The notes beneath the pieces were generated by a model. The model was given only the letters and a program-made list of their open reading frames with translations. It searched no databases and had not been told where the DNA came from. Of a DNA stretch of 64,000 nt, positions 9,743 through 50,400 are shown in pieces. The position numbers and the translations under genes are program-made. Each line of letters begins with the position of its first letter. Position 1 is the first letter of the stretch. Source of the DNA: Tubulanus polymorphus (lineage: Eukaryota; Animalia; Nemertea); contig NC_134035.1 of the NCBI RefSeq assembly GCF_964204645.1, positions 11,440,451 to 11,504,450 of the forward strand. The letters are read 5' to 3'.

Positions 9743-10774
9743 GTTGAGGGTGTTTCCAGGTGCTATGAGGATTCGAATCCCACTTATATTTAAATTCAAT
9801 TCAAATATTTTTATTGAACATAAAGTTATTTCTTATAACCGACGCACGAATTATGGATTGATGAAACGAAAAAGCCTATATCTCTGCTGTTTTTGATTAC
9901 ATGGGACCCGAATGCGGTGCCGAGGATTCTTCCACGAAACATCATTTGATTTTCTTTACATTTCCGTTTCTTCCGAGTTTCCGATCTACAATTGAAAAAC
10001 ATTTTGTTTTCTTCGTTTGCTCCATCTTTATTTTCAAAATTCATGACAATTTGCACTCTTTTATTATTTTCTTTTCATACTCAAATAATTTCAATGCTCA
10101 AATAATCAAAACAACAATTTCTATTGAAAAATCTGTGCTGCAAGTAATTAAAACTAGGGCCTTTGTGTGAATTATAAATAGCAAAAACAAGATCTATTGA
10201 ACTATTGCGCTAATTTGAGTGAAAATCATCATATCGTCACAATAGTTACTTGTGTCGCCAAACCTGGACAAGTGCAAAAAGTATAATTAACTATCCCTTT
10301 AAAAAAGAAATAATTTCCCATTTTCTAATTTAAAAAAAAAGATGGAATTTATCTCAGGTTGACCGAATTTGGAAAATTGGGCTGTGAAACAGCATTTGCA
10401 TGTTCGACTTTGTTAGGAGGCAGGTAATTGATATCGTAGTGTCGCGGCCACCAACAAATTCTGATCATATACATTGGCTAATTCCTGAAAACGAAAACAA
10501 ATGAGAATCGTGCAAAAAATCGGATATTTTTCCGATAGGTGTGTGTATCTAGGCCAATGCTTAGCCTAGTGTGCTGCTGCGGCGGTACTGTTACTGCGAT
10601 ATAGCGTCAGTTCCGTTCCATGCAGTTCTGTTTGAGAGTTCCTTACAAGCTGATCGAGACGGATTAATTCCCGACTCCTGAGGTGTTGTTGATCTCTAGA
10701 TACTCTCAGGGTGCCCTTATTCTTCGTAAGATAATTGAATCAGGTGATATACTAATAATCAAACCGTCGTCATT

Positions 10775-13700
10775 ATGGGGCTCGGAAGCTGTTTTACTTG
10801 CATCAAATATTTGATGATAGCATTTAATTTCATCTTTTGGGTAAGTGCCTTTTATCGTTATTTTTCCTTATTGTAAAACTTTGTCGTTGCATTAAAACAT
10901 CTCATTTCAATACTAAAGATACGGAATATTTCGTATCATCTTTAAAAAAATAGCTGTTCATCTTCATTTCTTTGACAATAACAATTCGAAAACTGTCGGA
11001 TTATTGTGGTCTGGTGACAGACCTAACTGCTCTAAAACCTAACTCGACGAATGCGTGCGTGTCGAAGATTCACGGCCATTCCTGGGAAGTGGTTGTTTCC
11101 ATCACACTGATCTACGACAGTCTACGATCCTAGTGTACCCTGGTGTGGTAACATTTTGGCGAACGAGAAGGGAGGAAAAATGTAAAATGTTAGTTCGGGA
11201 CGTACTTCATCATTGTGAAAAGTCTTTCTCTGCGGCTCTTCGCGGGAATGCGCGGAAAGTAATTTTGGCCCGCGTTCGAGAGAGTCTTCAAAATGGCATC
11301 AGCAGACGTCTGGCATTATATATAGGCTTCGCGAATGTTTGAGAGGGAAATATCTTTCCCAGCAGAATCGAGTATTCGAAGATGTTGAGGCCGCTACTTT
11401 ACTGCAACAAAAGTGAGGTTGAAAAAACATACACGTTGCCGACATCTTACAACAGTTGAATCTAGAGATATGCGATGCTCTAATTCATCGGATGATCATC
11501 TAAATTTACCCGCGCCTAGATAAACACCTCCCTCGTTTATATTTACCTCCATACTAGCTTTCCCTGCACATTCGTGCACGTTTGTTGGTACAACTCTAAA
11601 CCGACACGGTATAATGAGTTCAGATAATATTATCTATCTATCTTAAGTGATCTGCAGAAAGTTTGTACTGTGATCTCAAACCGGTCATTTCGCAGAAAAA
11701 TCCATTTAAAAATGATAGAATTTCTGAATGGTTTGAATATCAAGCCAAATTTCCACAGTTGCACACTTAGTGACTTATGTCCAAAATATTGTCTTAGATC
11801 CCAAGTCTAGCCTCTGGAAACCAGCCTGGGTAAGGATGGTTTTGTCTGGCCCCCATAAACGTTAAATACAGACAAATAGCTAGAAGGGTCAGGATGGTTG
11901 GCATTTTTTTTATAAGTCGATCAAAATGTTCTATCCATTTACGAAATAGAATCATAACAACGTCATAGTGCCCAAGTTTTAGTGAGTTTTTTTTGTGCAG
12001 TGCCTATCGCGCAGGAATCCCTAAATTACGACGGCCAGAAGAAACAACAATTAGTGAGCAATTTCCCTCGGGTAAAGATAACTACGAATTAATTGACGAG
12101 TGAACAAATAGAAAGATCGAAATATACGAATACATAGGTTATCTTATCGTTCGTATATACTTCAACAACAAAAATGCGATATTACCTATAACGATAATCA
12201 TTACACGGGCTATTTTAGCATCTGTTTATGTAAGCTAGCGTTTCATGTTATCTCGGGATAGAGAAAGGCATCTCCGACATTTCGTTGTGTGTTTTTTCAC
12301 GAGAGTGTTGTTCGACTGTGTACATATAAACTAATGTATAAATATATCAACTTGTAACAATGGCTAAACAGCTTACCACGAGTATTACAATAATACTTGA
12401 AAAAGCCAGCATTTTTGAGCGATTCACGTTATACATCGCCCAAGACATCGGTCAGTACGCACACCTCCAGCTCGGCTACGTCACATCATGGACTCTAAAT
12501 TGTTTTAGAATGTGAATGTCAAATTCGTTAATTTGAATTTAAAAGCGTGATTTTTTTAAACATATTACATTGAAATGCTTGTTTTACTTGATAAACGATA
12601 ATTCTTTGTTATACGATAACTTAATTATAGTTCATCCAAAACCTTGCAAAAAAATGATTTATCTCTATCTATTCAAATAGTTGTTGGGTATGGCCCTCCT
12701 GGGTGTTGGTATATGGCTGCTCGTCGATCCAGAATCGACAAAACTCATCCAGGAGGCTGGCATTGGAAATTTCTATATCGGTGCCTACGTCATGATCGTT
12801 GTTGGTATCATAGTGATGGTGCTAGGATTCCTCGGTTACTGTGGAGCTTGGAGAGAAAGCCAGTGCATGTTGACGACGGTAAATTTGTGAACTTGTTTCC
12901 CATTAATCGATCGGGTCGCTTTTGTAAACTGTAATAGCTGAAACAGGCGTGGAACCAAAGGGTGCATGGGGTGCTAGTACGCCCCCTTCCTTAGCAAAAG
13001 TCCCTTGGTATTGAACGTTCGGAATGCATGAATGATGGCTAATTTCAAGATTTTCCCAAAGATCCCCGTCACTGCTTCGCGCCTTCGGCACTGGCAGTTA
13101 CGGTAGGTTCAACGCAGAGCTGATTGTCCAGTAGAGTACCCCCTAGAATCGCCCCTGCCATAATGCTGTATCTAAATACGATACTATATTGCTCTGATTA
13201 AGAGGGAGGCAAGGCAATATCTCGAACAGTTCGGCAGCACGTTTTACCAACTACAAAAAAATGAAAATATCATGATATATCTCCATTAGATAAGCTTGAG
13301 TTCATTTGATGAAATATATTTCAGTTTTTCGTACTGTTGCTGTTGATTTTCATCACCCTGGTCGGATGCGGGATTTGGGCTGTCATTAAACAAGCAGCTG
13401 TAAGTTACTTGATTTAAGAACCCGCAACAAGATTCATTACGAATGCTGATTTTGGACCAGAAAACTGTGTTACTGAATTAGAAACATCGCAATCTGAGTC
13501 ATATATACCAGCCTAATAGAAGAAAGGATCTTCATTGTCAATAAATTCATTTTGACTTCGTTTGTAGGTGAAGAAATACTGGGGAATACATTTGCAAAGT
13601 CTCGTCGATAACTATAAAAACGACGACACACCTGAAAAGAATACGGATCTACTGAATATACAGAATCAGGTATGCGCGCTCCTCATTCGCAGCACCGGCG

Positions 13701-15288
13701 ACTGCTGTTCAGAAAACAATGCCTACATCTCTGCAGATGATGATAATTCATGAAGAAAAGGACAATGCCCTGAACCAACGATTCTAAGCATATATCGATA
13801 ATTGAATTGAATTGACCGACAACCAGTCCAGCCCAGTTACTGATGACGCAGAGCACATCCTCTCAAAAATAATAATTATTAGATTTTATCAAAAATAGAA
13901 TAAGAGTTATGAAATATATTTGAATACAAAATTAACGCCAAAATCCACAATTGTGATTTTTATTTTGTAACGCCAATATCGATGACGTAGTGCACATCGA
14001 CTAACACACCACTTAAATAACGTATAATAAGTATCAATGTAGATAAACATTATTGTAACGGTTATTACTGCGTCAAAAAGCATAAAAAAAGCACACTGTA
14101 TATAGCTTATTGTTTTGCCCGACAAAAAATACATCAAAATATGTTATATTTATACAACTAAATGGTTAGTGAAACTATGACCCGAAGTTCTATTTTCTGT
14201 ATCTTAGTTCAATTGCTGCGGGGTACATGGGCGAGTTGACTACCTTCCTGGTCTTGGACCGAAGCCGTGTACGCAATTAAGTACTCTCATTAAGCCGGTA
14301 TGTATAACATGGCGGATTAGTAGAAAATAATCCTGTACATTTTACCAGATAATCGGGTGGACGAGATGTCTCGAAGATCATGTCGAGAATGATAATGAAC
14401 AATTTAAAGTTTTGTGTATTTTAATGGTGTGTTTTATCGGGTTTGCTAAGAATTCGGATTAAATTTTAAAGTTCTCAAATTGTCGTGCAGGTTGTGGGAT
14501 GCGAGGAAGCAACGGCCAGCGTGTTGAAAGATAAATTGACAGTGGTAGCCGCAGTAGTCATCGGACTAGGAGTTGTCATGGTACGATTCAAATAACTCCT
14601 ATATAGAATGTGAATTGATTTGATGATAGAATACGAAAATATCGAAGAAGCAAAACATTATACCTCGGAAATTTCAACTGGGAATATTTTTCAACGCAGC
14701 CTTATCAATTTGTGATTTTAAAAATCACTAAATGATAAACTGTGGTCACGATCGCGAATATATTTACAAGAAATATTTCAAAAAGTTGGAACAGAAAAAA
14801 TATTCGAAGATATATAGCGCCGATATCTAGATTTGTAAATCATCTCTTTTACCGGGATGGGTTAAACAAAACGATACCTCGAAATACATAATATTTACGT
14901 AAGTTCATACACTGGACCCAAGTTCATAGGTTCATGTTCACGCTCAACGCAGACGATGCAGGAAAACACGGAAACAGGAGAGAGAACATGTTTCCGAGCG
15001 TTTGATTCCGTGTTTCTGTGTTTAAGCCCAACGCACTCGACGCGAGGAAAACACTCGCAGACATGTTTCCGTCTCCTGCTTCCGTGTTTCCTTGCGTCGC
15101 GTGCGTGAGATTCAAATCATAACTGGGCTCGGGGCATGATACGTATATCTACGTAATGGCAATTTATGGCCTGTAATTATGTCGTTGGAGTAAAGTAATT
15201 GTAACATTTTCTAAAATTTCATTTTCAGTTGATTGGTCTGATCTTCTCGATGTTGCTATGCTGCGCTATCAGGGACACTAGGGGTTAA
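10775..15288 (+). CDS. CD9-like tetraspanin B, 7 coding exons, 226 aa
   Basis: Exons 10775-10840, 12681-12878, 13325-13399, 13568-13669, 14208-14297, 14491-14580, 15229-15288; all GT-AG and phase 0. Protein MGLGSCFTCIKYLMIAFNFIFW...GFLGYCGAWRESQCML...FNCCG...KPC...VGCEE...LIFSMLLCCAIRDTRG*. Confidence 0.93.
13790..14080 (+). repeat. Dispersed repeat (unclassified, probably a non-autonomous transposon)
   Basis: ATTGAATTGAATTGACCGACAACCAGTC...GATGACG...CACATCCTCTCAAA...GTAACGGTT is shared with about 26424-26690 and partly with 20785-20880. Confidence 0.6.
14932..15113. mobile_element. Harbinger-like MITE fragments (AAGCCCAACGCACACGACGCAG family)
   Basis: Same motifs (AACATGTTT core, CAACGCA..CGACGC ends) as the TIR-bounded copy at 43582-43756 and the copy at about 59720-59890. 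Confidence 0.5.
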
Positions 15289-37829: not shown

Positions 37830-40765
37830 TTAATCGCCGCTGTCTTGGCTCGAAATTCGGGATACCTTCGTCGATGAGCTACGAATGCTATCCGACCTGG
37901 CGGGCGTGCCGCAGAACGGGAAAATTACGCGAACCATGTCGCGGAAACGCTTTCCAGAGACGCAGTACAAAAAGAAGTTGATGGCAAAATTTATCTGATA
38001 GAAGAAGAAGCAAAACGCCCGAATCCATTTCAACGTGAACCTTGTTTCCATGAAGGCTACGTAGTCGATCAGGGCCTGGCCGTCGGTGGCGACTGGTTTC
38101 TTGTAGGTGGCATTGTAGAACAACTCAACCGACTGTGTGATACCGAGCGGTAGGATCAAAATAAGATACGTGGTCGACACGAGAAGAAGAACTTTCGTGA
38201 TCCTGGTCTGCGATTTGCCTGGTATTGTCTTCTTGGCGTTATTCGAGGAGGCAGCGGTCATCGCTTGTTGGGCGTTTGCACTTTTCTTCAGTGAAATCAA
38301 GATGATACTGTTAAGAATGATGATGATCACACACGGCGTCCACGTGTTGACGGCTACGTACAAATAAATGATTTCCGGTATTGACGAGCGACTCGTACGA
38401 CAGGCCTTGTACCCGAAGACGCTATCGCCCTCGAACCCTGTCACGAAGATCTTGTGGCAAGCGACGACGACTATGACTATTGTGACGATGACGATTATCT
38501 TCCTGGCTTTCGACACTGTACACAACGTTTGCACTTTGAGCGGTCTCAGGACGGCTATGGCGCGCTCGATGGTCATGCATACGATCATCCAAACGCTGAG
38601 AATGTTGAAAATCTCCACCCCGACCGAGTGTACTTTGCAAAGCGTCTCGGATTCTTGAAAAGCTTTGTTGATCGTGTCCGGGTTCTGTCCGCGAAGTACG
38701 CCGACCAAAAAGTTGAACAGCAGCGAGCAGGTGTCGTAAATGGCCAGGGCGGCTAGATAGTTGTTAGCGGACACCTTCCGCATAAGCGGATTCAGAAGGA
38801 CGATTAGTGCCAAGATGTTGCAGACGACACCGACCACGACGATCAGTACGGTGCCGTAGTGCAGTAGGAATTTGACGGCGTTGACGAAAGGTTTGAACGA
38901 TTTCCAGAATTTCAGTAATTGACACGGCCACTCTGCCCGTACGTCGGCAGTAATCGGAACGGAATTCAGTTCATCAACTATTTCGAAGGTTACGCTGCAA
39001 TTCGACCTGAAAATATAACCATGCGTCTTTTGCATTTTCGAATAACCTAAGCACTTTTTTCTTTGCAACCCCATTCAAAGAAGACTTTTGGGCAATCATT
39101 CAACATAGTGTAAAATGGATTAAAAATCGACTTTTTAGTTCAGCTGCATATCTAGCTGTGCTGGTCCTTTACGACCTATTTATACATAGGTATAAACATG
39201 CACATGTACTACTACCCGTTTTTGGTCGGGCCAAACAGGCTAGGGCCCATTTTGGCACCCGTGTTGAACAGTTGTTCCGGGTCAAATTTGGTCCGGGCCA
39301 AATTTGACCTTGGCAAAAAACGCTCGTGTTATTCGCGGCTATAATTTGGCATTTTGGAGCAAATTATTGAATTCTCTGTTTGTTAGAAATTCTGTTAATT
39401 CGACCGATCATCGGACTATATCTGATGTACTTCGATAAGAGGGATTATTTCCTATAGTGCAATATCAAGACGAGTCTAAGATTAGTTTAAGTACTTACCA
39501 GTCACGAGACATCGTTCGAGGTTGTTTTGACGGTTGGCTCCTCGTGGTCGCTTCCGACGCGTCCGTGAATCCATCATTAGTCGTATTCTGAAATGACAAT
39601 CAAGATATATGTTTACAAACATGGATTTCGATTTTAGACATAGATAAATAAACATGGCTTGCTCTGCGTGGTAATTTCCGTTTCTTCGCGGCGAAGAAAC
39701 GAAACAAATCAACCATTTATATAAACATTAGTGGATAAGCAGTTAATGTTTACCTTTACCAGTGGTAAGATTGAGTTGTACTGTTTGCCATGCTTTAGTT
39801 GGCATGGAACGTTTAATGCGCTGAATGTTTTTTTCTTTACTCGGCCCGAATCAGCCACCATAATATGAAATAAGATAAAATCCCACTATTTACAAATTAA
39901 AAGAATTTAAAAACAAGAATTTATTTATTAAATCTAAAATATTTAAAAGACACGACGTTTCGATCTCACCCTAGAGATCAACGTCACCTGACGATGATCT
40001 CTAGGGTGAGATCGAAACGTCGTGTCTTTTAAATATTTTAGATTTAATAAATAAATTCTTGTTTTTAAATTCTTTTAATCTGTAAATAGTGGGATTTTAT
40101 CTTATTATCCGTTCACCACGTTTGAGTGTGGTTATCGTTCTATAATATGAAATGTTTGTTATTTTCAGATTTCTAGTAACACATCTGTTTCACGCAAAGC
40201 TCCATTCATTCAAGTGTCATTAGACGTTTTTTGATACGGGGTCTTCATCTTGTAAAGAAGCGTGCTTCAAATCTCGGTGAAAACTAATTCGCCCGGAAGA
40301 AGTTTCTAATATAAAATTTATATTTTCTTCATGTTCCCTGGACGTTTGCCTGGCATTGAAATTGTTAACAAACTGTCCAATACAAATATCAAAATAATGA
40401 ATTCACACAATTTCAAATAACGGAAAAGAGAGTAGCAAGGAGACTGAGTTCTATATGAGCTATTTATCAAACATGCTTTGAAGATGGCTCATAAAATTGA
40501 ATCGAACGACACGTCACTTACTCTCTTAGTTTACCTCCAAAATTCCGTTTATTTTTCTTCAATTGAATAATCGACTAATAGACTCTTTTCTATGAAAACT
40601 GACTAATATGTTGTGTCTGAATAATGTATTATCAAAGATAAATCTTATGAATCTTACCGCATTTTCATCTGCGCTTTTCGTTGAAATAGTCGAGGTTTCG
40701 GCCATTATGCCCACGAAAGTAGCTAATAATAGCAACATAAACACGGCTAATCCTCTGGACTTCAT
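37830..40765 (-). CDS. Class A GPCR of the FMRFamide/myosuppressin/sex-peptide receptor and GPR139/142-like group, 457 aa, with signal peptide
   Basis: Exons 40765-40658 (MKSRGLAVFMLLLLATFVGIMA..., phase 0), 39587-39499 (phase 2) and 39006-37830 sum to 1374 nt in frame. Seven TM helices with GxxCN, LAxxD, ERA (DRY position) and NFAINFFLY (NPxxY position) plus SGKRFR. Confidence 0.88.
39872..40141 (+). mobile_element. Penelope-like retroelement foldback insertion (inverted pLTR plus tail)
   Basis: 118-bp inverted arms 39869-39986 and 39989-40106 with 2 mismatches, an unpaired 35-nt 3' tail, and a 12-bp TSD ATAATATGAAAT at 39860-39871 and 40142-40153. Confidence 0.75.
39988..40026 (+). ncRNA. 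Minimal type I hammerhead ribozyme motif
   Basis: CUGACGA-U-GAUCUC-UAGGGU-GAGAUC-GAAAC-GUCGU-GUC: core boxes CUGANGA and GAAA, a 6-bp stem II and candidate GUC cleavage triplets. Stem III is minimal and stem I is not evident. Confidence 0.6.
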
Positions 40766-42744: not shown

Positions 42745-45700
42745 TCACACGGCGCTCTCTTTCAAGAAGACGACAGTTTGTTCGTTTCCCTCGTGAAGCT
42801 GCAACGCGTCCCAACGTTCGATGTCATCGGTCACTAATTTATTCACAATGGCGGCGCAGTAACACGTGCTCAATACGTTGCTCGTCGATCTGAGCCGATC
42901 CCTGAAATATCAATGAGTAAGCGATAAGTGAAGCCCACACTCGAATCACACTAGTTTTCTATTTCCCTGATATTCTACAGATTATTTATCGATAGTTTTT
43001 TTACAGTGATGATAGTGGCGAGTGAACCAGATGCAAGTAATAATTTGCTGGATGCGAGAACCTGAATTATTTTTTCATGTTTTCATTATTGTCTCACGTC
43101 TTTTTTCATGGCTCGCCGATTGTTCAATATACCATACCCACCCGTTAGCGACACTGATTAATCCATGAACGATACTGAATGAATAGATATTACCATATTT
43201 AGTTTATTTATGAACTACCAAACGATACGGAAATAAGCGATGCCTTGGATGAGATTGTGTCATCGTTGGAATATCACTCACAAGCATTAGGAATCAATAT
43301 TACTGGTTTACCGTTTGGCGTTGCGATTAGCCGCTCAGGAAAATGATCTAAAGATTAGCCTTAGCGGTTTTAGCCGAGCAACGAAAACACTTTCACTTAC
43401 AAAATCCATTCCAATGCAAATAGCATGTTGATGCTATTAGTCGGCAAACCAGTCGAGGTAAGAATCATCAAAATACACACCATACTTGCACTAGGTACGC
43501 CGGGTAGGGCAAACATGGCCAGTGAAACCAACAACCTAGAAGAAAACAGGAAACGTGTATCGCTTGAATAATATAACACCGTAAAGACCGACGCACACGA
43601 CGCAGTGTAACAGAAACATGTTTGCGAGCGTTTCCCTATGTCGTGTGCGTTGACTAAGAAACATGGTTTCGGGGAGCAACGTTTCCAATATAAAATATGC
43701 TTGTTTCAGTATTTGGTCGTTTCTGTGTTTCCCTGCGTCGTCTGCGTTGGGCTTTAGAAATAAACGCGAATGAAATAAACGATATTTTTCTATCATCTGA
43801 TATCAATGATAAACAGTGATATTTCGATGTAAGAGGCACACACGGCCATCCTACCCAATTGTGAACGTGGTCGCCGGATTGAGGCTGATGCCGTTCATCT
43901 GCGCGATGAAAATCGTCGCCGCCGTCACGAATATCGCGCTTCCATTGCGATTAGTTCCGGCGCAGAACGGCACGACGAATCCGTAAACTCTTCGGTCGAC
44001 GCCGTGTTTTTCGCAGGTGCGTATCATTTCCGGCATAACCGCGTACCTGCGTAGAAAAAACAAAATACATGCATCAAAAAACATCTATTCATGGTCTCGA
44101 GGACCCAAGTAATAAATAATTTGATATTCCGACTCGAAAACTATAACCGCGATCCTGCGAGCGTTTTTGACCCATGTCAAATTTGGTCCGAAATTACTAC
44201 TCACAAGGGTGTCTTAATGGGCCTGTGACTGTTCGGCCCTGGCCAATTCGTTGACCATTATCGAATTATTGCAACTGTCTAATTAGGCACGGGCCAATTT
44301 AGACTCTGACCTGATCCGACTTTGCCAATTTGGCCCGGGCCAAATCGTCTCCGTGTGATCGGCTACGAGCCATTTTCTAAATTTTGATTTGATTTTGTTA
44401 GAGCAGTTGTAACGAATACAAGTTTAGCGATAGGATTACTATAATCTGTTTTGAAAATGGCCAAAAATACATAAATTTATGTATTTTGTAAAATTGCAAT
44501 TGAGTGGAAAAATATGACTGCTCTCATAGTTTCTTTTTTAATTGTGGGGTTTTTTATATTCAAACATAAAACAGTCGCTTTCCTTTGGATACCAAAATGG
44601 CTACACTATTCTTATTTCACCAGCGACAAAGACCGGTCTCCGACAACAGGTAAAACGGTTTCAAAATCTTCATACACATTTCGATATTAGAATATACGTA
44701 CGATGAAGTAGTGGCGAATATCGTGATCCACGACTTCAACGAGTTGATAAACATAACGACCGGATTGCTGCGAACTATTAACACGTACATCACTTGCAAG
44801 TAGACCAGCTGATGAAACACGAGCCCGACGACGATAGTCATCGCGAAATAACCGAGCAGTTCAAACGTCACTGATATGTCTGATTCGACTCTGAGCAACG
44901 CGTTGCATATGAGGCTAGCGATACCGATCGGCGAAAACCTAGAATTCAGAATATCAAATAGAATCTACTGATTAGGAGGTAGTTTCGCTACCAGCGAACG
45001 CTTTTTGATAATTGACACACTAATTGACCGATCACCTTTTTAAGGCATACTCGATTAATTAAGAAGCGTTTCTGGCAAATAAGTTGCGACACCTAAATTG
45101 GAAATCGTTGTTAAAGTAATTTCAAATGAATCCATGTTTGTTGGACCCCGTTTTTAAGTGTTTTTAAACTTTAAAGTACGATATCAAGATAGAGTCCAAA
45201 ATCGTTTTATAAAACATATAATATTGAAAGTACATCAGAATCAGCGAAAAGATTCGTCGCTATTTCAACATTTCAAATATAAAAATACCAGAGAAAATAG
45301 CTGAAGAGCTTCAGTATGACTTGCATAACGGCGGTCATCAGGTGAATAATCGGCTGACTGGGCGTTCTCATCGAACCACTGCAAGCGATCCCGAATACAG
45401 TCGAGAAAAACAGAACGCCCAACAAGTTGCTCCCGTCATAAAGCCGTACCTATTAAATGAAGAATATTTACGACTGGTTAAAGGACAACTGAATAGTTCG
45501 AATTTTTCCGAAATATTAAATCTTTGTAAAGCGATACACGTTGGCGTATTAGATTTCACAATTAACTAAAAACAGTCAAATTAGAGGGATTTTAAAGCGG
45601 AATCCGCGACGTGACGCGGATATCGAAAAGATAAGTGTCTCACCTTTCGTATTATTTTAGTGGCGAATTCGGTATCTGTTGAGTTGTATAAAGTTGAATT

Positions 45701-47446
45701 ACCGGTGATGAATAGAGTGGAATTGATAGTTGTTGTTGATGGTAAACTGGTATTTAATACTTTTAACACCGTTTGTTCGCTACGTATCATCGCGTCGACT
45801 GCATTGGCCGGAAAAATGTTCCTGCGGAGAGAGATGACAACCAGAGCGGTCTAAACGTCGTGATAGAAAACAAAATTCGAGACATATTTCAAAAGAGGCA
45901 GAGTAATCGTAATGAGAGAAATACAGTCGCTGATCAATCGTTTTGAAAAAAAAGTTGTGGATCATAATATCGTTTTGAATTTTTACCTTCGAATTTTTTG
46001 AAGGAAACACGATTTAATAAAAACAACAAGTCCGTGACGGCGTTGAGAAATTATATATGAGATTCATTTCAAACGATTGAAGAAGAAAATGGTCGATGTA
46101 AAAATCCTTTTAAAAATTGAATTACGTTGATGTGTAGAGAAATCTGATATACCATTCATACGTATCTTACCTGACTAAATCTGCAAGAACGTCCGATGTC
46201 GTCAGTTTCATCAAATTGACCTCGGTAGATCCGATTTCTCTTATGCCACCAGTGTCTCCTTTCAAGATAGATTTAATATTCTAATCAGCGTCAAAACTTG
46301 AATTCGTGGCCGATGCCGTGTGTAAATTCGACGTCAAGGCCACCGAATGCCAACGGCCACCGTCGCACGTTCGTTTCTACATCGAAGCGCCTTTCATGGG
46401 CCGAATAGTACCGGTTGCTTTCTGGCCTGCTGACGAACATGTAGCATATAAGCAGAAATACTTACCAGGCTTTATTGCGTAAACAATGGCGAAACCGATT
46501 AGGCAGCCGATAACGTTATTAACAAACACGTAGATGAACGTGTACAGTCCCATTTTACCATTCAGTCGTGGATCCAAACTCGAACAACCTGCAACAAGTT
46601 GGGGATCGAACTAGTTATTCTTGGGTCTTACGAGAGGAAACGCGATCGACCGTAGTCCAGCTTATGTCGGCTGCACTTGATTTCCGGCAACTACCGAAAT
46701 TATGATCGCCCACCAGTTGCTTCCCCAACTACGATCACTGGCAACTGAACCCAGTTACGTAGCGGGGGGGTTGGTTTAGGGGTTACGACGAACCTTTCAA
46801 AATCCGAAGCTGGTCTGCTTTTTGAAAAATTAATTTGCAAACGCGCCCTGAACCGACTGTAGATGGCCATTATTTTGAGGATGAATTTCAATAAAGCATC
46901 GGGATTCGTTCGATGAGATAAAAATCCTACCTGAAATGATGCTTGAAATAACCAACGGTACAATCATCATCGTGAGAAGGCGTAGAAAAATAATGCCTGG
47001 CATTTCTGAAAACATGAAAAAAAAAATATATATATATATGTATGTTTTCCATATTTTGGATAATTTTTATTTAGTTCTTTTTCACTTGAAAAAATGCTTT
47101 TTAAAACACTTTACAAGCATTAGTCAACAGAACTGGACTTTTTCAACTTGACGAGTTCGAATTATAATAATCTGATGGAATTGGGAATAGAAAAATTGGC
47201 TCATCGACTAAGTTTTCAAAACTTACCGATCCAGATCAGAACTTCCTCCGACAAGGCTAAGCCCATCAGACTAAACCCGATTATAAATCCGACTGCTACA
47301 CCGGCGATAGCCAGCAAAAGCAGCAGATTTTCCTTCAGCCATTCTTTACATTGAATTTTATCCATTTCGTTGAGGTAGATTGTCTCGTCTGGGTGTCTTG
47401 TGGTTAGGTAATCTTTTTCGTTACCATCGTTCATAGAGGCATTGTG
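42745..47446 (-). CDS. Divergent SLC1 (EAAT / dicarboxylate-amino acid symporter family) transporter
   Basis: Exons 47446(ATG 47434)-47227, 47005-46931, ~46588-46466, 46258-46171, 45821-45644, 45449-45289, 44938-44702, 44046-43855, 43535-43401, 42901-42745; all in frame. Motifs: KENLLLLL, PGIIFLRLLTMMIVPLVISS, DLVRNIFPAN, GSNLLG, SPIGI, IFIAQMNG, PGVPSA, WILDRLRST. Confidence 0.9.
43582..43756. mobile_element. Harbinger-like MITE in SLC1 intron
   Basis: TAAAGACCGACGCACACGACGCAG / CTGCGTCGTCTGCGTTGGGCTTTA inverted ends. Confidence 0.6.
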
Positions 47447-50400
47447 CTGTTGATATAAAGAAGACCCAGTCAAATGGGCGTTACGTTATATAAATAGCAC
47501 GACTAAAACGAAGACCGCAGACAATATAAGTATGTACGCCTAAAAATGCAATACACTACAAAATTCTGCAACGAGAGCAAACCAAACAGACAAACTAGGG
47601 GAGAAGGTGTAGATTACCAAATTTGGAATGACAAACCTAAACTAAATAATGTAGTCGAATGAAAAACTCTAATCCGTGAACACTGTAGATCGAATCGAGG
47701 TTCCACAATTCAAATTTTTATACGATGTAATTTATTCAAACGAAACCACAACGTTTCGACTGTTGACTGAAATTCTCGTGACATAATTATCATTCACAGT
47801 TGGATGTTTCACATTGTTGAAATAGTTCAGCTTTTTGGTTTTACAATAAAACTCGACCGCCGATCACACAACTATATCTGTACTTCGATTTCCGATTTCA
47901 AAATCGAGCCCCCCTGTTTCGTTCCCGGCAGGTGTGGCGGGTCTGTAAGGGACACTCAATCAAAAAATCAAACGAAATTTACCGTCCAAATAAAAAACAG
48001 GGACAAACCCTATTTTAAGATCAAAAGACCCTCTTAAGGGCAGATTAGCGCAGAAACGGGCGCAAGAACGAACCTTCGTTTCTTCACTCGTTTCTGCGCG
48101 GTAATTTATGTTTCGTCGCGTCGAAGAAACGGACGAAGATAAGAAGCAATATATCGTTTTGTGCATGGCGTATTAGACGGATTTTTTTTTCAGCTTAACT
48201 CAGCCCAAATCAGCCACCATGTATATCAGACGTGTCTTAAAGTCGCTAAATGTCGCTAACACGCGCAAATCAAATTCTTACATAGAACTATGAAAGTAAT
48301 TAATATTACTGATTATGACTGAAATATTACCGAAATATTTATAATACATTAAGCACGCAATCAACATTTTACGTAAAAGCACATTTCGCATTTTAATATT
48401 GTATGTAAGTACCGGTATGTGAAATTAATTAATTCAATCTGTTGCTGCTTCGGTGACAAATTATTAGTATTAATGTAATGATAAATAATATCTTGTGTTT
48501 TATTACAAAATTAAAAATTAACACGTGCAAATCTATGGATATCGCAGCACACGCACGCGCGGGTACAATATTACTGGCTGATCTGCCCACGTGATATCTC
48601 AATTCGGTCGTTAAAAATGGATAGAATAAGTCACAAAGATAGATTAAGTGTAGAGATCCCCTGTCATAAGGCCGAGAGTGACGAATCCTATCGCTTACCA
48701 AATACGATATGAGCTATATTCCGTTCAATTCGTCGGGTTGCAAAAGGTCACCCTGCAGATATCTCCTCGTACTTGGAACTTCTTTTGCAGCCTGCACCCG
48801 AAGTTCGTCCTATACAGAGTTGATCAATTTTTGCTCGTCGTCATTCACGTATTGCGTCATAAAAATGTGCACATATATCGTGTATATGGATTATATTATA
48901 TGGTGAATTACAAAAAGTAATGCGACAATTTTTTCTGCTCTTAAAATAATATTCTGTGCGTTAATTAGTTGTTAACACACTGTGCACACGATTGTTCTAA
49001 TTACTAGGATAATATCTACTTTGGAATTATGTACGGGGGGAGACCGGCATGGTATAATGGGCTATATTCAATTCACCGAAAAAAGTCCATATTATCTCAA
49101 ATAGCGTGGTAAACCGTCCACATAACGATTAATTTAGTTCTACATCGTTTAGGCTAAAAAATTCAATACCTTGTTTCTCATTTCTGCTGAGATTAAAAGT
49201 CAAGAACAAAAAGAGCTGATATTAACAGACACGGCAGTTATACGAATGAATTGATTGCAAATTCTATTGCAGTTTACAAAAGTGACCCAGCCGATTGGGA
49301 GAAACAATCTATAATCTCTTAACCTTACAATTCAGCAAGTTTGTCAAACCAGGCAAGTGTAATCCTGCTGGTCAAACCAACTGCAACCGTTTTTTGTCAA
49401 TAGGTCGCGTATCCACAACAACAATGAATAGCGCTGATGATAAAAATAGTTGACCTCGCGACCAAACACCTGTCATTCATTTAAAAAGAATCTCTACCTT
49501 TCATTCGATCGGATGAAAATAGCCCGACGCCATTGTGCACGTTGCAAATTGAGCACTTTTAGCTCATACTGATTTCTGATATGTCCAAAACAATCATTAT
49601 CGATCCGCAAGGAGAGACAAGAGTCTGGTTTTATTTCCACCAGTGAACGAAATAACGATGCACAAAGATCTAGTTATAGTATGTTAGATAGATTCATCGT
49701 TACTTATATGGATTATGAGCTTACCAAATAGTGTGTATGATAGTCACGGAGTTTGTCTGCGACTGTCTGGATATGGCTATAGTCTTGAATAATCCGTTTG
49801 ACCAACCCCGGGTATTAATTACTATGCACCAACTTGAACTTACACCTCACTAATTAAAGCCACCAGCCGACCATTCATGTTTTATCACAAGAATAAAGTG
49901 ATTTAGAAATAAAAAGTATTACGCATAACCTATAACGCATTATACTACGTGCCAAAGCACCATTTTTCTCCAACGAAGAAACAACGAAACTTTTGGTTGT
50001 AATCGTCCCTTTTCTATGGCCTGACTACCCGCATGTATAAGAAATATGAGTGAACGATAGCTATAGCGAGGTTCTGCTGAACCTGCGCATCATGTCATAA
50101 TATGACATCAGATTTTATGTAGTGTTTAGGCATAAATCGTGTGTAAATTCATTCACTTGCATTTTTGTCTATTCATTGTTTTTCTAAATACCCCGCCCGA
50201 GGGCATACGAGTGCAGTTCTTCCGGTGCTTTCCATCTAGTGCCGTTTATTTGATGAGCAGCCAAAATTATTTGGTAGTTATGAATTGCTAGCGGGATCAA
50301 CGTCGCCATGTTTTTGGCAGGACCGATAACTTAAGTCAAAAGCCAATCAATCCAGCCAGCTAGGACTTGCATTTTCTAAATTGGAAACTGCTCGTGGAAA

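What the first reader, a model, noticed from the sequence alone, without database searches (positions are those of the whole stretch)
42745..47446. SLC1/EAAT with NMDG changed to NRNG and its cation-coupling ligands removed: candidate Na+-independent or uncoupled glutamate/aspartate carrier
Seen: TM7 reads PFCAGTNRNGSAIFV (NRNG at 43941-43952) against canonical PVGATINMDGTALYE. TM8 reads LEWILDRLRSTSNVLST against VDWFLDRLRTTTNVLGD. TM3 reads YVFVNN against YYMTTT. HP1 reads ATTSSYAVMP against GTSSSSATLP. Established (GltPh/EAAT1 numbering): D312/D400 and the TM3 Y/T/T residues form Na3; D405/D487 forms Na1; M311/M399 lies beside Na2; Y405 and E406 are needed for K+ and H+ coupling; D394/D476, R397/R479 and N401/N483 bind the acidic substrate. 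All substrate ligands are kept here, while the acidic cation ligands are lost (D400 to N, D487 to T, E406 to V, Y405 to F) and Arg replaces Met. The TM2 anion-pathway Ser (ISS) and the following LD are retained, and all 10 exons are open, so this is not decay. Inference: the Arg may act as a built-in cation, as Arg/Lys does in the Na+-independent CaiT and ApcT. The protein could be a facilitative carrier, an exchanger or a substrate-gated anion channel or sensor.
Basis: partly seen in the sequence, partly recalled or inferred. Interest (0 to 1): 0.8.

Follow-up and report, generated by a model that had tools for sequence, protein, structure and literature searches.

The report
Divergent ribbon-worm SLC1 transporter gene
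A ribbon-worm gene encodes a glutamate-transporter relative that keeps its substrate-binding residues, has lost the usual sodium-binding ones and carries an arginine in their place; it belongs to a large invertebrate subfamily, with no functional study found, that probably works without normal sodium coupling.

Summary
A minus-strand gene (42745-47434) in Tubulanus polymorphus has 10 exons, all with GT..AG introns. It encodes an open 517-aa SLC1 protein whose TM7 motif reads NRNG.

Alignment to human EAAT2 shows that the Na3 Asp, the Na1 Asp and the K+/H+ Tyr/Glu pair are replaced by N, T and F/V. Arg sits at the Na2 Met position. The substrate ligands and the anion-selectivity Arg are kept.

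Most of these changes are not specific to this gene. They are traits of a large, mainly spiralian SLC1 subfamily (SH-aLRT 100). That subfamily typically reads NADG in TM7 and has His in place of the Na1 Asp. Arg or Lys at the Met position recurs in it: NRDG in gastropods, NKSG in bivalves, NKAG in a Tubulanus paralog and NRNG in Lineus.

The gene evolves fast but looks intact. It keeps 52 of 60 clade-invariant positions, and both exonic SNPs are synonymous. No RNA data were available, and RefSeq annotates only exons 6-10.

Na+-independent transport with Arg as a built-in cation is plausible. Precedents are LaINDY, CaiT, ApcT and the H+-coupled prokaryotic SLC1 homologues. It remains untested.

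The parts
47227..47434 (-). Exon 1: ATG at 47434, N-terminus and TM1
   Evidence: GTAAGT donor. The N-terminal half aligns with P0023 from its residue 15.
46931..47005 (-). Exon 2: TM2, including the Ser pair of the anion pathway
   Evidence: Pfam SDF profile positions 29-51; TM2 column.
46466..46588 (-). Exon 3: TM3. Codons 46532-46515 read Y-V-F-V-N-N; N118 and N119 sit at EAAT1 T130 and T131 (Na3 ligands)
   Evidence: A synonymous SNP (V115V) lies at 46527.
46171..46258 (-). Exon 4: start of the TM3-TM4 loop; the AAAG acceptor is the weakest splice site in the model
   Evidence: Loop length between KPG and ADLVR is 24 aa, the same as in P0001 (counted by eye on the translations).
45644..45821 (-). 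Exon 5: TM4 region and a loop rich in N-x-S/T sequons
   Evidence: No Pfam hit on its own; this region is variable across the family.
45289..45449 (-). Exon 6: TM5. Contains Met251, where the RefSeq model XP_074660956.1 starts
44702..44938 (-). Exon 7: TM6 and HP1a; HP1 begins at 44715
   Evidence: (SDF profile positions 180-254).
43855..44046 (-). Exon 8: HP1b and TM7. G379 at 43982-43980 (EAAT1 R388 position), NRNG at 43952-43941, F396/V397 at 43931-43926
   Evidence: (56.4 bits).
43401..43535 (-). Exon 9: HP2 (tip ALPGVPSASMV at 43510-43478) and the start of TM8
42745..42901 (-). Exon 10: TM8 and C-terminus, stop TGA at 42747-42745. D467 to T478 lie at 42900-42865; D, R, R and N are kept and T replaces the Na1 Asp
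   Evidence: A synonymous SNP (L499L) lies at 42802.

Best explanation
This is an intact, complete gene of Tubulanus polymorphus for a 517-aa SLC1-fold carrier.

Shown:
- It belongs to a large, mainly spiralian subfamily that is separate from the canonical EAAT/ASCT genes. The same genome also has four canonical NMDG genes.
- In this subfamily the TM8 Asp of the Na1 site is usually His. The K+/H+-coupling Glu is Ile or Val. The Met of NMDG is variable, and the second TM3 Thr is Asn.
- This gene is a fast-evolving nemertean member that goes further. It has Arg at the Met position, Asn instead of the Na3 Asp, Asn instead of the first TM3 Thr, and Thr instead of the Na1 Asp or His.
- The substrate ligands (S393, D467, R470, N474) and the anion-selectivity Arg (R468) are kept.

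Inferred:
- With both carboxylate cation ligands and the Tyr/Glu pair gone, the protein cannot run the canonical 3 Na+/H+/K+ cycle.
- It most likely carries an acidic amino acid or a related carboxylate without Na+ coupling, by exchange or facilitated diffusion.
- The Arg390 guanidinium would supply the positive charge that bound Na+ normally provides to organise the TM7 loop, position R470 and let HP2 close.

Roughly 0.9 for the identity part and 0.4 for the mechanism.
For: Gene and family:
- Open 10-exon model with canonical splice sites.
- Colinear Pfam SDF hits.
- EAAT2 alignment at E 5e-52 that fixes the residue mapping.
- The predicted C-terminal half has the SLC1 helix pattern, and every top PDB match is EAAT, ASCT or GltPh (TMq 0.6-0.69, probability 1.00).

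Subfamily:
- The clade is supported at SH-aLRT 100 and shares the TM3, HP1, TM7, HP2 and TM8 signatures.

Constraint:
- 52 of 60 clade-invariant columns are kept (clade range 49-60).
- The N-terminal half is as conserved as the C-terminal half.
- Both exonic SNPs between two individuals are synonymous, against 17 non-coding.
- RefSeq independently uses the same exon 6-10 junctions.

Mechanism, from the literature:
- D312A and N310A are non-functional and T92/S93 are Na3 ligands (PMC3302783).
- The Met sulfur coordinates Na2 and the TM8 Asp coordinates Na1 (PMC11297037).
- H+-coupled homologues differ at T92, M311 and D405, and an ancestral intermediate binds aspartate without Na+ (PMC12668577).
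- LaINDY R159/H392, CaiT R262 and ApcT K158 act as Na+ surrogates.
- Arg or Lys at the Met position occurs in 25 of 63 clade rows, with at least 4 changes on the tree. That argues it is a selected state.
Against: - No transcript evidence: the three public runs are all DNA.
- RefSeq models only 267 aa, starting at an internal Met.
- The terminal branch is very long: 1.93 against a median of 0.33 in the first tree.
- The nearest NRNG protein (Lineus) has lost the substrate ligands D476 and N483 and has a scrambled HP2. NRNG therefore does not guarantee a working amino-acid site.
- Arg at the Met position could instead contact the substrate, because M311 touches bound aspartate.
- Side-chain geometry could not be examined, and no member of the subfamily has been assayed as far as I could find.
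Confidence: 0.45

Rival explanations
1. Arg390 changes substrate selectivity and does not replace an ion. The protein would still be ion-coupled, to H+ or to a single Na+ held mainly by backbone carbonyls. The extra positive charge in the pocket would shift specificity towards more anionic substrates.
For: - In GltPh and its ancestors the Met side chain points into the pocket and makes van der Waals contact with aspartate (PMC12668577).
- Na2 is formed mostly by HP2 backbone carbonyls, which sequence cannot rule out.
- Asn can still offer an oxygen ligand at the TM3 and TM7 positions.
- From my own knowledge, not checked here: EAAC1 M367 mutants change substrate selectivity (Rosental and Kanner 2010).
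Against: - Both carboxylates of Na1 and Na3 are gone, and D312A is non-functional in the canonical background.
- No new acidic or His residue appears at the known protonation positions: E406 is Val, the clade's His is Thr, and the HP1 position is Tyr.
Confidence: 0.2
2. The protein no longer transports. It would act as a substrate-gated or constitutive anion channel, or as a sensor.
For: - The anion-selectivity Arg (EAAT1 R477) and the TM2 Ser are kept.
- The conserved Arg at the cytoplasmic end of TM7 (EAAT1 R388) is Gly here. R388D/E drives EAAT1 into a constitutively open channel with almost no transport (PMC5472439).
- Loss of that Arg is seen in 8 of 25 R/K-type clade members against 1 of 38 others.
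Against: - Gly is neutral, not acidic, so the EAAT1 result may not transfer.
- The association has no phylogenetic power: only 2-4 independent pairs.
- All four substrate ligands and both hairpins are conserved, as expected of a carrier.
Confidence: 0.15
3. It is a lineage-specific duplicate under relaxed constraint, on its way to becoming a pseudogene. It may be expressed only as a truncated product, or not at all.
For: - Long terminal branch.
- RefSeq predicts only the C-terminal 267 aa.
- No RNA runs were found.
- No close orthologue appears among 1.84 billion representatives; the next-best exon 8 match is 55% identical.
- The Lineus NRNG protein is degenerate at its binding site.
Against: - Ten open exons with canonical splice sites.
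- 52 of 60 clade-invariant residues are kept, mostly with conservative changes.
- The N-terminal half is as conserved as the C-terminal half.
- Two synonymous and no non-synonymous SNPs between individuals.
Confidence: 0.12

Closest known systems
Human EAAT1-3 (SLC1A3/2/1), e.g. EAAT2 structure 7xr4
   Same: - Same fold and domain order.
- The C-terminal half aligns almost without gaps (E 5e-52; Foldseek TMq 0.66, about 34% identity).
- The substrate ligands D476, R479, N483 and the Thr/Ser after the motif, the anion-selectivity R477 and the TM2 Ser are all kept.
   Different: - NMDG reads NRNG.
- The Na3 Asp, the Na1 Asp and TM3 T130/T131 are replaced by N, T and N/N.
- The K+/H+ pair Y405/E406 is F/V.
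- R388 is Gly.
- HP1 and HP2 carry the subfamily's own signatures.
ASCT1/ASCT2 (SLC1A4/5), obligate neutral amino-acid exchangers
   Same: - They lack the Tyr/Glu pair (AIFQ against AIFV here).
- ASCT1 is the best PDB sequence match for exon 8.
- They show that an SLC1 protein without K+ coupling works as an exchanger.
   Different: - ASCTs keep NMDG and all three Na+ sites.
- In the ASCT-type rows (AIFQ; P0150, P0152, P0177, P0198) the R479 position is Cys or Thr. This protein keeps the Arg and has lost the Na+ ligands.
Spiralian 'EAAT-like' subfamily (e.g. Tubulanus XP_074660429.1 = P0023 with NKAG, Tubulanus P0001 with NADG, gastropod NRDG proteins, Lineus XP_064634956.1 with NRNG)
   Same: - Same clade (SH-aLRT 100).
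- Shared TM3 x-N, HP1, PFC...G-S-A-[ILV]-[FY]-[IV], HP2 ALP.VPS and EW.LDR.R...N motifs.
- A basic residue at the Met position is shared with 25 of 63 members.
- P0023 and the Lineus protein share KSW before HP1, loss of the TM7 Asp and loss of the His.
   Different: - Only 30-41% identical to any of them.
- Combines R with D-to-N, TM3 N-N and Thr instead of His.
- Unlike the Lineus NRNG protein, it keeps every substrate ligand and a normal HP2.
H+-coupled and Na+-independent prokaryotic SLC1 homologues (GltP/GltT type, and the ancestral intermediate of PMC12668577)
   Same: Coupling-ion change within the same fold. It is marked by substitutions at the T92, M311 and D405 positions while the substrate site is unchanged.
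   Different: Those proteins have M311L and D405N and keep D312. This one has Arg, Thr and D312-to-N. It is an animal protein from a different branch of the family.
LaINDY (DASS family), CaiT and ApcT: transporters with a built-in cation
   Same: Functional analogy only. Basic side chains sit in former Na+ sites and make transport Na+-independent (R159/H392, R262, K158). LaINDY is also an elevator-type carboxylate exchanger.
   Different: These are unrelated families and folds (DASS, LeuT fold). No structure shows where Arg390 sits in this protein.

Membership tests
SLC1 / DAACS (Pfam SDF, PF00375) | Sequence match to the family profile along the whole protein | tested here: met
   Seven exons hit PF00375 colinearly across profile positions 29-364; exons 8 and 9 exceed the cut-off on their own. 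The EAAT2 alignment gives E 5e-52.
SLC1 / DAACS (Pfam SDF, PF00375) | Transport-domain architecture TM6-HP1-TM7-HP2-TM8 | tested here: met
   The AlphaFold model of the C-terminal half (pLDDT 70.5) has these helices in order. All top Foldseek PDB hits are EAAT, ASCT or GltPh.
SLC1 / DAACS (Pfam SDF, PF00375) | Conserved NMDG(T) motif in the unwound part of TM7 | tested here: not met
   The motif reads N-R-N-G-S. Only the Asn, the Gly and the hydroxyl residue are kept.
EAAT-type concentrative glutamate transporter (3 Na+/1 H+ in, 1 K+ out) | Carboxylate ligands of Na3 (TM7 Asp) and Na1 (TM8 Asp), plus the TM3 Thr-Thr | tested here: not met
   N391, T478 and N118/N119 occupy these positions.
EAAT-type concentrative glutamate transporter (3 Na+/1 H+ in, 1 K+ out) | Tyr-Glu pair in TM7b for K+ and H+ coupling | tested here: not met
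   F396 and V397. The roles of the pair rest on my own knowledge of GLT-1 Y403/E404 and EAAC1 E373. The E404 exchange-mode paper is cited.
EAAT-type concentrative glutamate transporter (3 Na+/1 H+ in, 1 K+ out) | Acidic amino-acid binding residues (TM8 D, R, N; TM7 T/S) | tested here: met
   D467, R470, N474 and S393. Roles are described.
EAAT-type concentrative glutamate transporter (3 Na+/1 H+ in, 1 K+ out) | Na+-dependent uptake with the canonical stoichiometry | not testable with these tools
   Needs expression and flux or current measurements.
ASCT-type exchanger | Intact Na+ sites, no K+-coupling Glu, and a neutral residue at the R479 position | tested here: not met
   The Glu is absent (met). 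The Na+ ligands are absent and the Arg is retained (both not met).
Spiralian 'EAAT-like' NADG/SH subfamily | Falls inside the clade on a tree | tested here: met
   SH-aLRT 100 for the clade in three trees. Position within the clade is unresolved.
Spiralian 'EAAT-like' NADG/SH subfamily | Signature motifs: TM3 T-N, HP1 TSTAVAIP, TM7 PFC...SA.[FY][IV], HP2 ALPSVPS, TM8 EW.LDR.R...N..SH..CA | tested here: inconclusive
   Most are present: PFC, SAIFV, ALPGVPS, EWILDRLR...N and CYCAA. TM3 is N-N, HP1 is TSSYAVMP and the His is Thr. 52 of 60 clade-invariant columns are kept.
Transporters with a built-in cation (works like LaINDY/CaiT/ApcT) | A basic side chain occupies a former Na+ site and transport is Na+-independent | not testable with these tools
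   Arg is at the sequence position of the Na2 Met. Structure prediction returns no coordinates, so the geometry could not be read.

The most novel reading that the evidence does not exclude
A whole animal SLC1 subfamily has swapped its Na+ sites for built-in cationic side chains: His at the Na1 Asp position and Arg or Lys at the Na2 Met position. The subfamily spans molluscs, annelids, nemerteans, rotifers and flatworms, with a hemichordate member. It would then work as Na+-independent carriers of acidic amino acids. These would be the first such animal SLC1 proteins and a natural counterpart of LaINDY in a second elevator family. This gene is the extreme case, with every acidic cation ligand gone and only the Arg left.
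Probability: 0.3. Interest if true: 0.8.

Novelty: new variant of a known kind. Interest (0 to 1): 0.55.

Why it matters
How SLC1 transporters couple substrate to ions, and how that coupling changes in evolution, is an active question. Recent work reconstructed the Na+-to-H+ switch in prokaryotes (PMC12668577). It also asked why ASCT2 is an exchanger (PMC11297037).

This gene and its subfamily offer a natural experiment in animals. The substrate site is conserved, while the Na1, Na2 and Na3 ligands are replaced in many combinations: NADG, NRDG, NKSG, NKAG, NRNG and SANG, with His, Thr, Ser or Gln at the Na1 position. If the Arg, Lys or His act as tethered cations, that would show a second route to Na+ independence in the family, parallel to LaINDY.

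It also matters for annotation. These proteins are labelled 'excitatory amino acid transporter(-like)' and could be mistaken for synaptic glutamate-uptake carriers in invertebrate neurobiology. The RefSeq model of this gene also appears to lack its first five exons.

Tried and rejected
1. Exon rows aligned to P0023 (A1). The aim was a search profile that avoided joining exons. MAFFT scattered the short rows, so I dropped it.
2. Transcript evidence. All three runs found are genomic DNA, with contigs across introns and no spliced joints.
3. Contigs encoding P0121. None are on record.
4. Microsynteny with the Lineus NRNG locus L031. Its neighbours (GAPDH, patatin/EF-hand, RA-domain gene) are absent from the window.
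5. Reciprocal best hit with the Lineus NRNG protein. It is inconclusive: 34% identity to ours against 33% to the intronless paralog.
6. Phylogeny of the R/K type.
   - The nemertean trio is supported at 97-98 in two trees but unresolved under the mixture model with more long branches.
   - AU tests reject neither a single R/K clade (p 0.45) nor an alternative placement (p 0.17).
   - Two earlier AU runs crashed.
7. My recollection that EAAT1 R388 sets anion selectivity was wrong. It is R477, which this protein keeps. R388D/E gives a constitutively open channel.
8. Association of R388 loss with R/K at the Met position. Raw counts are 8/25 against 1/38, but the independent-pairs test has no power.
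10. The structure model cannot show where Arg390 points, because no coordinates are returned.
11. The joined 517-aa model was never sent to a search or fold tool. It was used only inside scripts built from window.fa. Searches ran exon by exon by reference, or with database proteins.


Full report
**What is at the locus**

The minus strand between 47434 and 42745 carries a 10-exon gene. Every intron has GT..AG ends. The coding sequence is 1554 nt and translates to 517 aa without a stop. Seven of the exon translations hit Pfam SDF (PF00375) in colinear order; exon 8 alone scores 56 bits.

The organism is the nemertean Tubulanus polymorphus. The window is contig C11:11.44-11.50 Mb of a 268-Mb assembly.

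RefSeq has a model for this gene: XP_074660956.1, 'excitatory amino acid transporter 2-like', 267 aa. It equals residues 251-517 of my model exactly. An independent predictor therefore uses the same exon 6-10 junctions, but it starts at an internal Met and omits exons 1-5.

Those five exons are real coding sequence. TM1-3 are 42-50% identical to clade members, which is as high as the C-terminal half. The TM3-TM4 loop is the same length as in the paralog P0001, by my count on the translations.

I built the joined protein only inside scripts, from window.fa. It was never sent to a search or fold tool. Searches were made exon by exon by reference, or with database proteins.

**Residue mapping**

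P0121 aligns to human EAAT2 (7xr4, native numbering 269-517) with a single one-residue gap, at E 5e-52. EAAT1 numbering is EAAT2 numbering plus one in this region.

| Role | EAAT1 residue | This protein |
|---|---|---|
| TM7 motif | N398 M399 D400 G401 | N389 R390 N391 G392 |
| Substrate (TM7) | T402 | S393 |
| K+/H+ coupling | Y405 E406 | F396 V397 |
| Cytoplasmic end of TM7 | R388 | G379 |
| TM8 | D472 | E463 |
| Substrate (TM8) | D476 | D467 |
| Anion selectivity | R477 | R468 |
| Substrate (TM8) | R479 | R470 |
| Substrate (TM8) | N483 | N474 |
| Na1 | D487 | T478 |
| Na3 (TM3) | T130 T131 | N118 N119 |

The TM3 rows come from a MAFFT alignment with 117 homologues.

The functional meaning of these positions is documented:
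- Na3 is formed by T92, S93, N310, D312 and a TM3 carbonyl in GltPh. The EAAT1 equivalents are T130 and T131. N310A and D312A are non-functional (PMC3302783).
- In the ASCT2 structures, Na1 uses the TM8 Asp carboxylate plus TM7 carbonyls. Na2 uses HP2 carbonyls plus the Met sulfur. Na3 uses the motif's Asn and Asp plus two TM3 Thr (PMC11297037).
- Bound aspartate is held by T314, D394, R397 and N401, and M311 is in van der Waals contact with it (PMC12668577).

I corrected one point of my own. The anion-selectivity arginine is EAAT1 R477 (PMC4924932), and this protein keeps it. R388 is a different residue. R388D/E locks EAAT1 in an open-channel state with almost no transport (PMC5472439), and this protein has Gly at that position.

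**The pattern belongs to a subfamily**

The genome has about eight SLC1 loci.
- Four are canonical, with NMDG..TALYEA: two in tandem at C2:2.36 Mb, one on C6 and one on C1.
- One at C2:4.29 Mb reads NIAG in an otherwise canonical context.
- Three are divergent: this gene (NRNG), C11:3.36 Mb (NKAG, = P0023) and an intronless gene on C5 (NADG, = P0001).

A word search with the intronless paralog returned about 100 full-length animal relatives annotated 'excitatory amino acid transporter-like'. They come from molluscs, the annelid Owenia, the nemerteans Tubulanus and Lineus, and rotifers. The exhaustive exon 8 search added Echinococcus and the hemichordate Saccoglossus.

On trees these form one clade, apart from the canonical EAATs, with SH-aLRT 100. 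The clade shares the following:
- TM3 x-T-N
- HP1 TSTAVAIP
- TM7 PFCVTL-NADG-SA[LI][FY]I, so it has no Glu
- HP2 ALPSVPSSSIV
- TM8 EW.LDR.R...N..SH..CA, so His replaces the Na1 Asp

Within the clade the motif varies widely:
- NADG, NSDG, SANG, SCNG
- NRDG in many gastropods
- NKSG in bivalves
- MRGG, ERMG
- QADG in rotifers
- KKDG in Saccoglossus

Arg or Lys at the Met position occurs in 25 of 63 clade rows, with at least four changes on the tree. NRNG itself recurs in Lineus longissimus XP_064634956/8.

What is particular to this gene is the combination. It has Arg together with loss of the TM7 Asp, Asn-Asn in TM3, Thr instead of the clade's His, and Gly at the R388 position.

**Relationships inside the clade**

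The model is only 30-41% identical to any other protein. In the first tree its terminal branch is 1.93 against a median of 0.33.

It pairs with the Tubulanus NKAG paralog at SH-aLRT 97 in the first tree. In a lighter analysis it forms a trio with P0023 and the Lineus NRNG protein at 98. Under the mixture model with more long branches, the placement collapses to a polytomy.

By eye the trio shares several derived states:
- KSW before HP1, where the others have RPW or RAW
- a basic residue at the Met position
- loss of the TM7 Asp
- loss of the His

This gene and the Lineus protein also share LGYF, RVY and loss of the R388 Arg.

AU tests reject neither a single R/K clade that includes the mollusc group (ΔlnL 2.8, p 0.45) nor an alternative placement (p 0.17). 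Microsynteny and reciprocal-best-hit checks were uninformative.

The Lineus protein has lost D476 and N483 and has a scrambled HP2. This gene keeps all of them.

**Is the gene alive?**

For:
- Ten open exons with canonical splice sites.
- 52 of 60 clade-invariant columns are kept (clade range 49-60, median 58), mostly with conservative changes.
- Against a second individual, the two exonic differences are both synonymous (V115V, L499L), while 17 differences are non-coding.
- The C-terminal half is predicted as an SLC1 transport domain (pLDDT 70.5; helices in the order TM6, HP1a/b, TM7, HP2a/b, TM8). Every top PDB match is EAAT, ASCT or GltPh.

Against:
- No RNA runs were available; the three runs found are DNA.
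- RefSeq models only the second half of the gene.
- The branch is long.
- There is no close orthologue in 1.84 billion representatives; the next-best exon 8 match is 55% identical.

**How it most likely works**

Shown: the fold, the intact substrate ligands, and the absence of both cation-binding carboxylates and of the Tyr/Glu pair.

Inferred: the canonical 3 Na+/H+/K+ cycle is impossible. The most likely function is Na+-independent carriage of an acidic amino acid or related carboxylate, by exchange or facilitated diffusion.

In canonical members, Na+ binding at Na1 and Na3 flips the NMD loop inward, moves the TM8 Arg into place and lets HP2 close. A permanent positive charge on residue 390 could hold the loop in that state.

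Precedents:
- H+-coupled prokaryotic homologues differ at T92, M311 and D405.
- An ancestral intermediate binds aspartate with no Na+.
- LaINDY, also an elevator-type carboxylate exchanger, has R159 and H392 in its former Na+ sites. CaiT R262 and ApcT K158 do the same in the LeuT fold.
- Without the K+-coupling Glu, GLT-1 becomes an obligate exchanger (cited).

I put about 0.9 on the identity and 0.4 on this mechanism.

Rivals:
- The Arg is a substrate or selectivity determinant and some ion coupling remains (0.2).
- The protein is a channel or sensor, suggested by Gly at R388 together with retained R477 (0.15).
- Relaxed constraint or decay (0.12).

**Novelty and score**

Two literature searches found no paper describing this subfamily or a basic residue at the Met position, so I found no evidence that any member has been assayed. 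The proteins are known only as automatic annotations. The scan had already flagged the NKAG paralog in this genome (s1-492871), which I verified independently.

I class the finding as a new variant of a known kind. The lack of any expression or functional evidence for this particular fast-evolving copy holds the score at 0.55.

Noticed in passing
G000 C11:3364493-3368090 (loci L027, L028, L030); protein P0023 = XP_074660429.1: A second divergent SLC1 gene lies about 8 Mb away on the same contig. It reads NKAG in TM7 and ST in place of the Na1 Asp, and it keeps the substrate ligands. It is the nearest relative of the window's gene in two of three trees.
   Followed up: partly
L001 (G000 C5:19176014-19177360); ORF L001:1285-2970 minus = P0001: An intronless 561-aa NADG/SH paralog, while the other SLC1 genes of this genome have many exons. 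It has a 66%-identical counterpart in Lineus (P0002). It may be an old retrogene.
   Followed up: partly
L009, L018, L023 (G000 C2:4292025-4293718): An otherwise canonical-looking SLC1 gene (TALYEA, LTD in TM8) reads NIAG instead of NMDG. It has lost the Met and the Na3 Asp but keeps the Glu and the Na1 Asp.
   Followed up: no
window 45289-47434 (exons 1-6) against RefSeq XP_074660956.1: The RefSeq protein for this gene is only 267 aa and starts at Met251 in exon 6. Exons 1-5 are open, properly spliced and as conserved as the rest, so the public annotation is probably truncated.
   Followed up: yes
window 44170-44543 (intron 7) and 47723-47900 (upstream of exon 1): High-copy repeats. Summed contig depth runs to thousands in all three DNA runs, against about 30 elsewhere, with many loose ends at 44323, 44361, 47849 and 47892.
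   Followed up: no
window 37830-39074, minus strand: An intronless 414-aa ORF hits rhodopsin-family GPCR profiles (7tm_1 at 3e-18, Srw-type at 5e-18). It lies about 3.7 kb downstream of the SLC1 gene.
   Followed up: partly
Clade alignment; window 43980-43982 for this gene: Loss of the conserved Arg at the cytoplasmic end of TM7 (EAAT1 R388) is seen in 8 of 25 clade members with R/K at the Met position. It is seen in 1 of 38 without. There are too few independent pairs for a test.
   Followed up: partly
P0145 (Saccoglossus kowalevskii XP_006824951.1), P0247 (Echinococcus multilocularis CDS35737.1): The His-for-Asp subfamily is not strictly lophotrochozoan. A hemichordate protein (KKDG, SH) and a cestode protein fall in or next to the clade, both on very long branches.
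   Followed up: no
L031 (Lineus longissimus OU342999.1:6021350-6046069), gene at 10001-14720: The Lineus NRNG protein has D476 to S, N483 to D, HP2 LSPRTSNGTIL and HP1 ending in Ser. Its binding site looks degenerate although the gene is annotated with two isoforms.
   Followed up: partly
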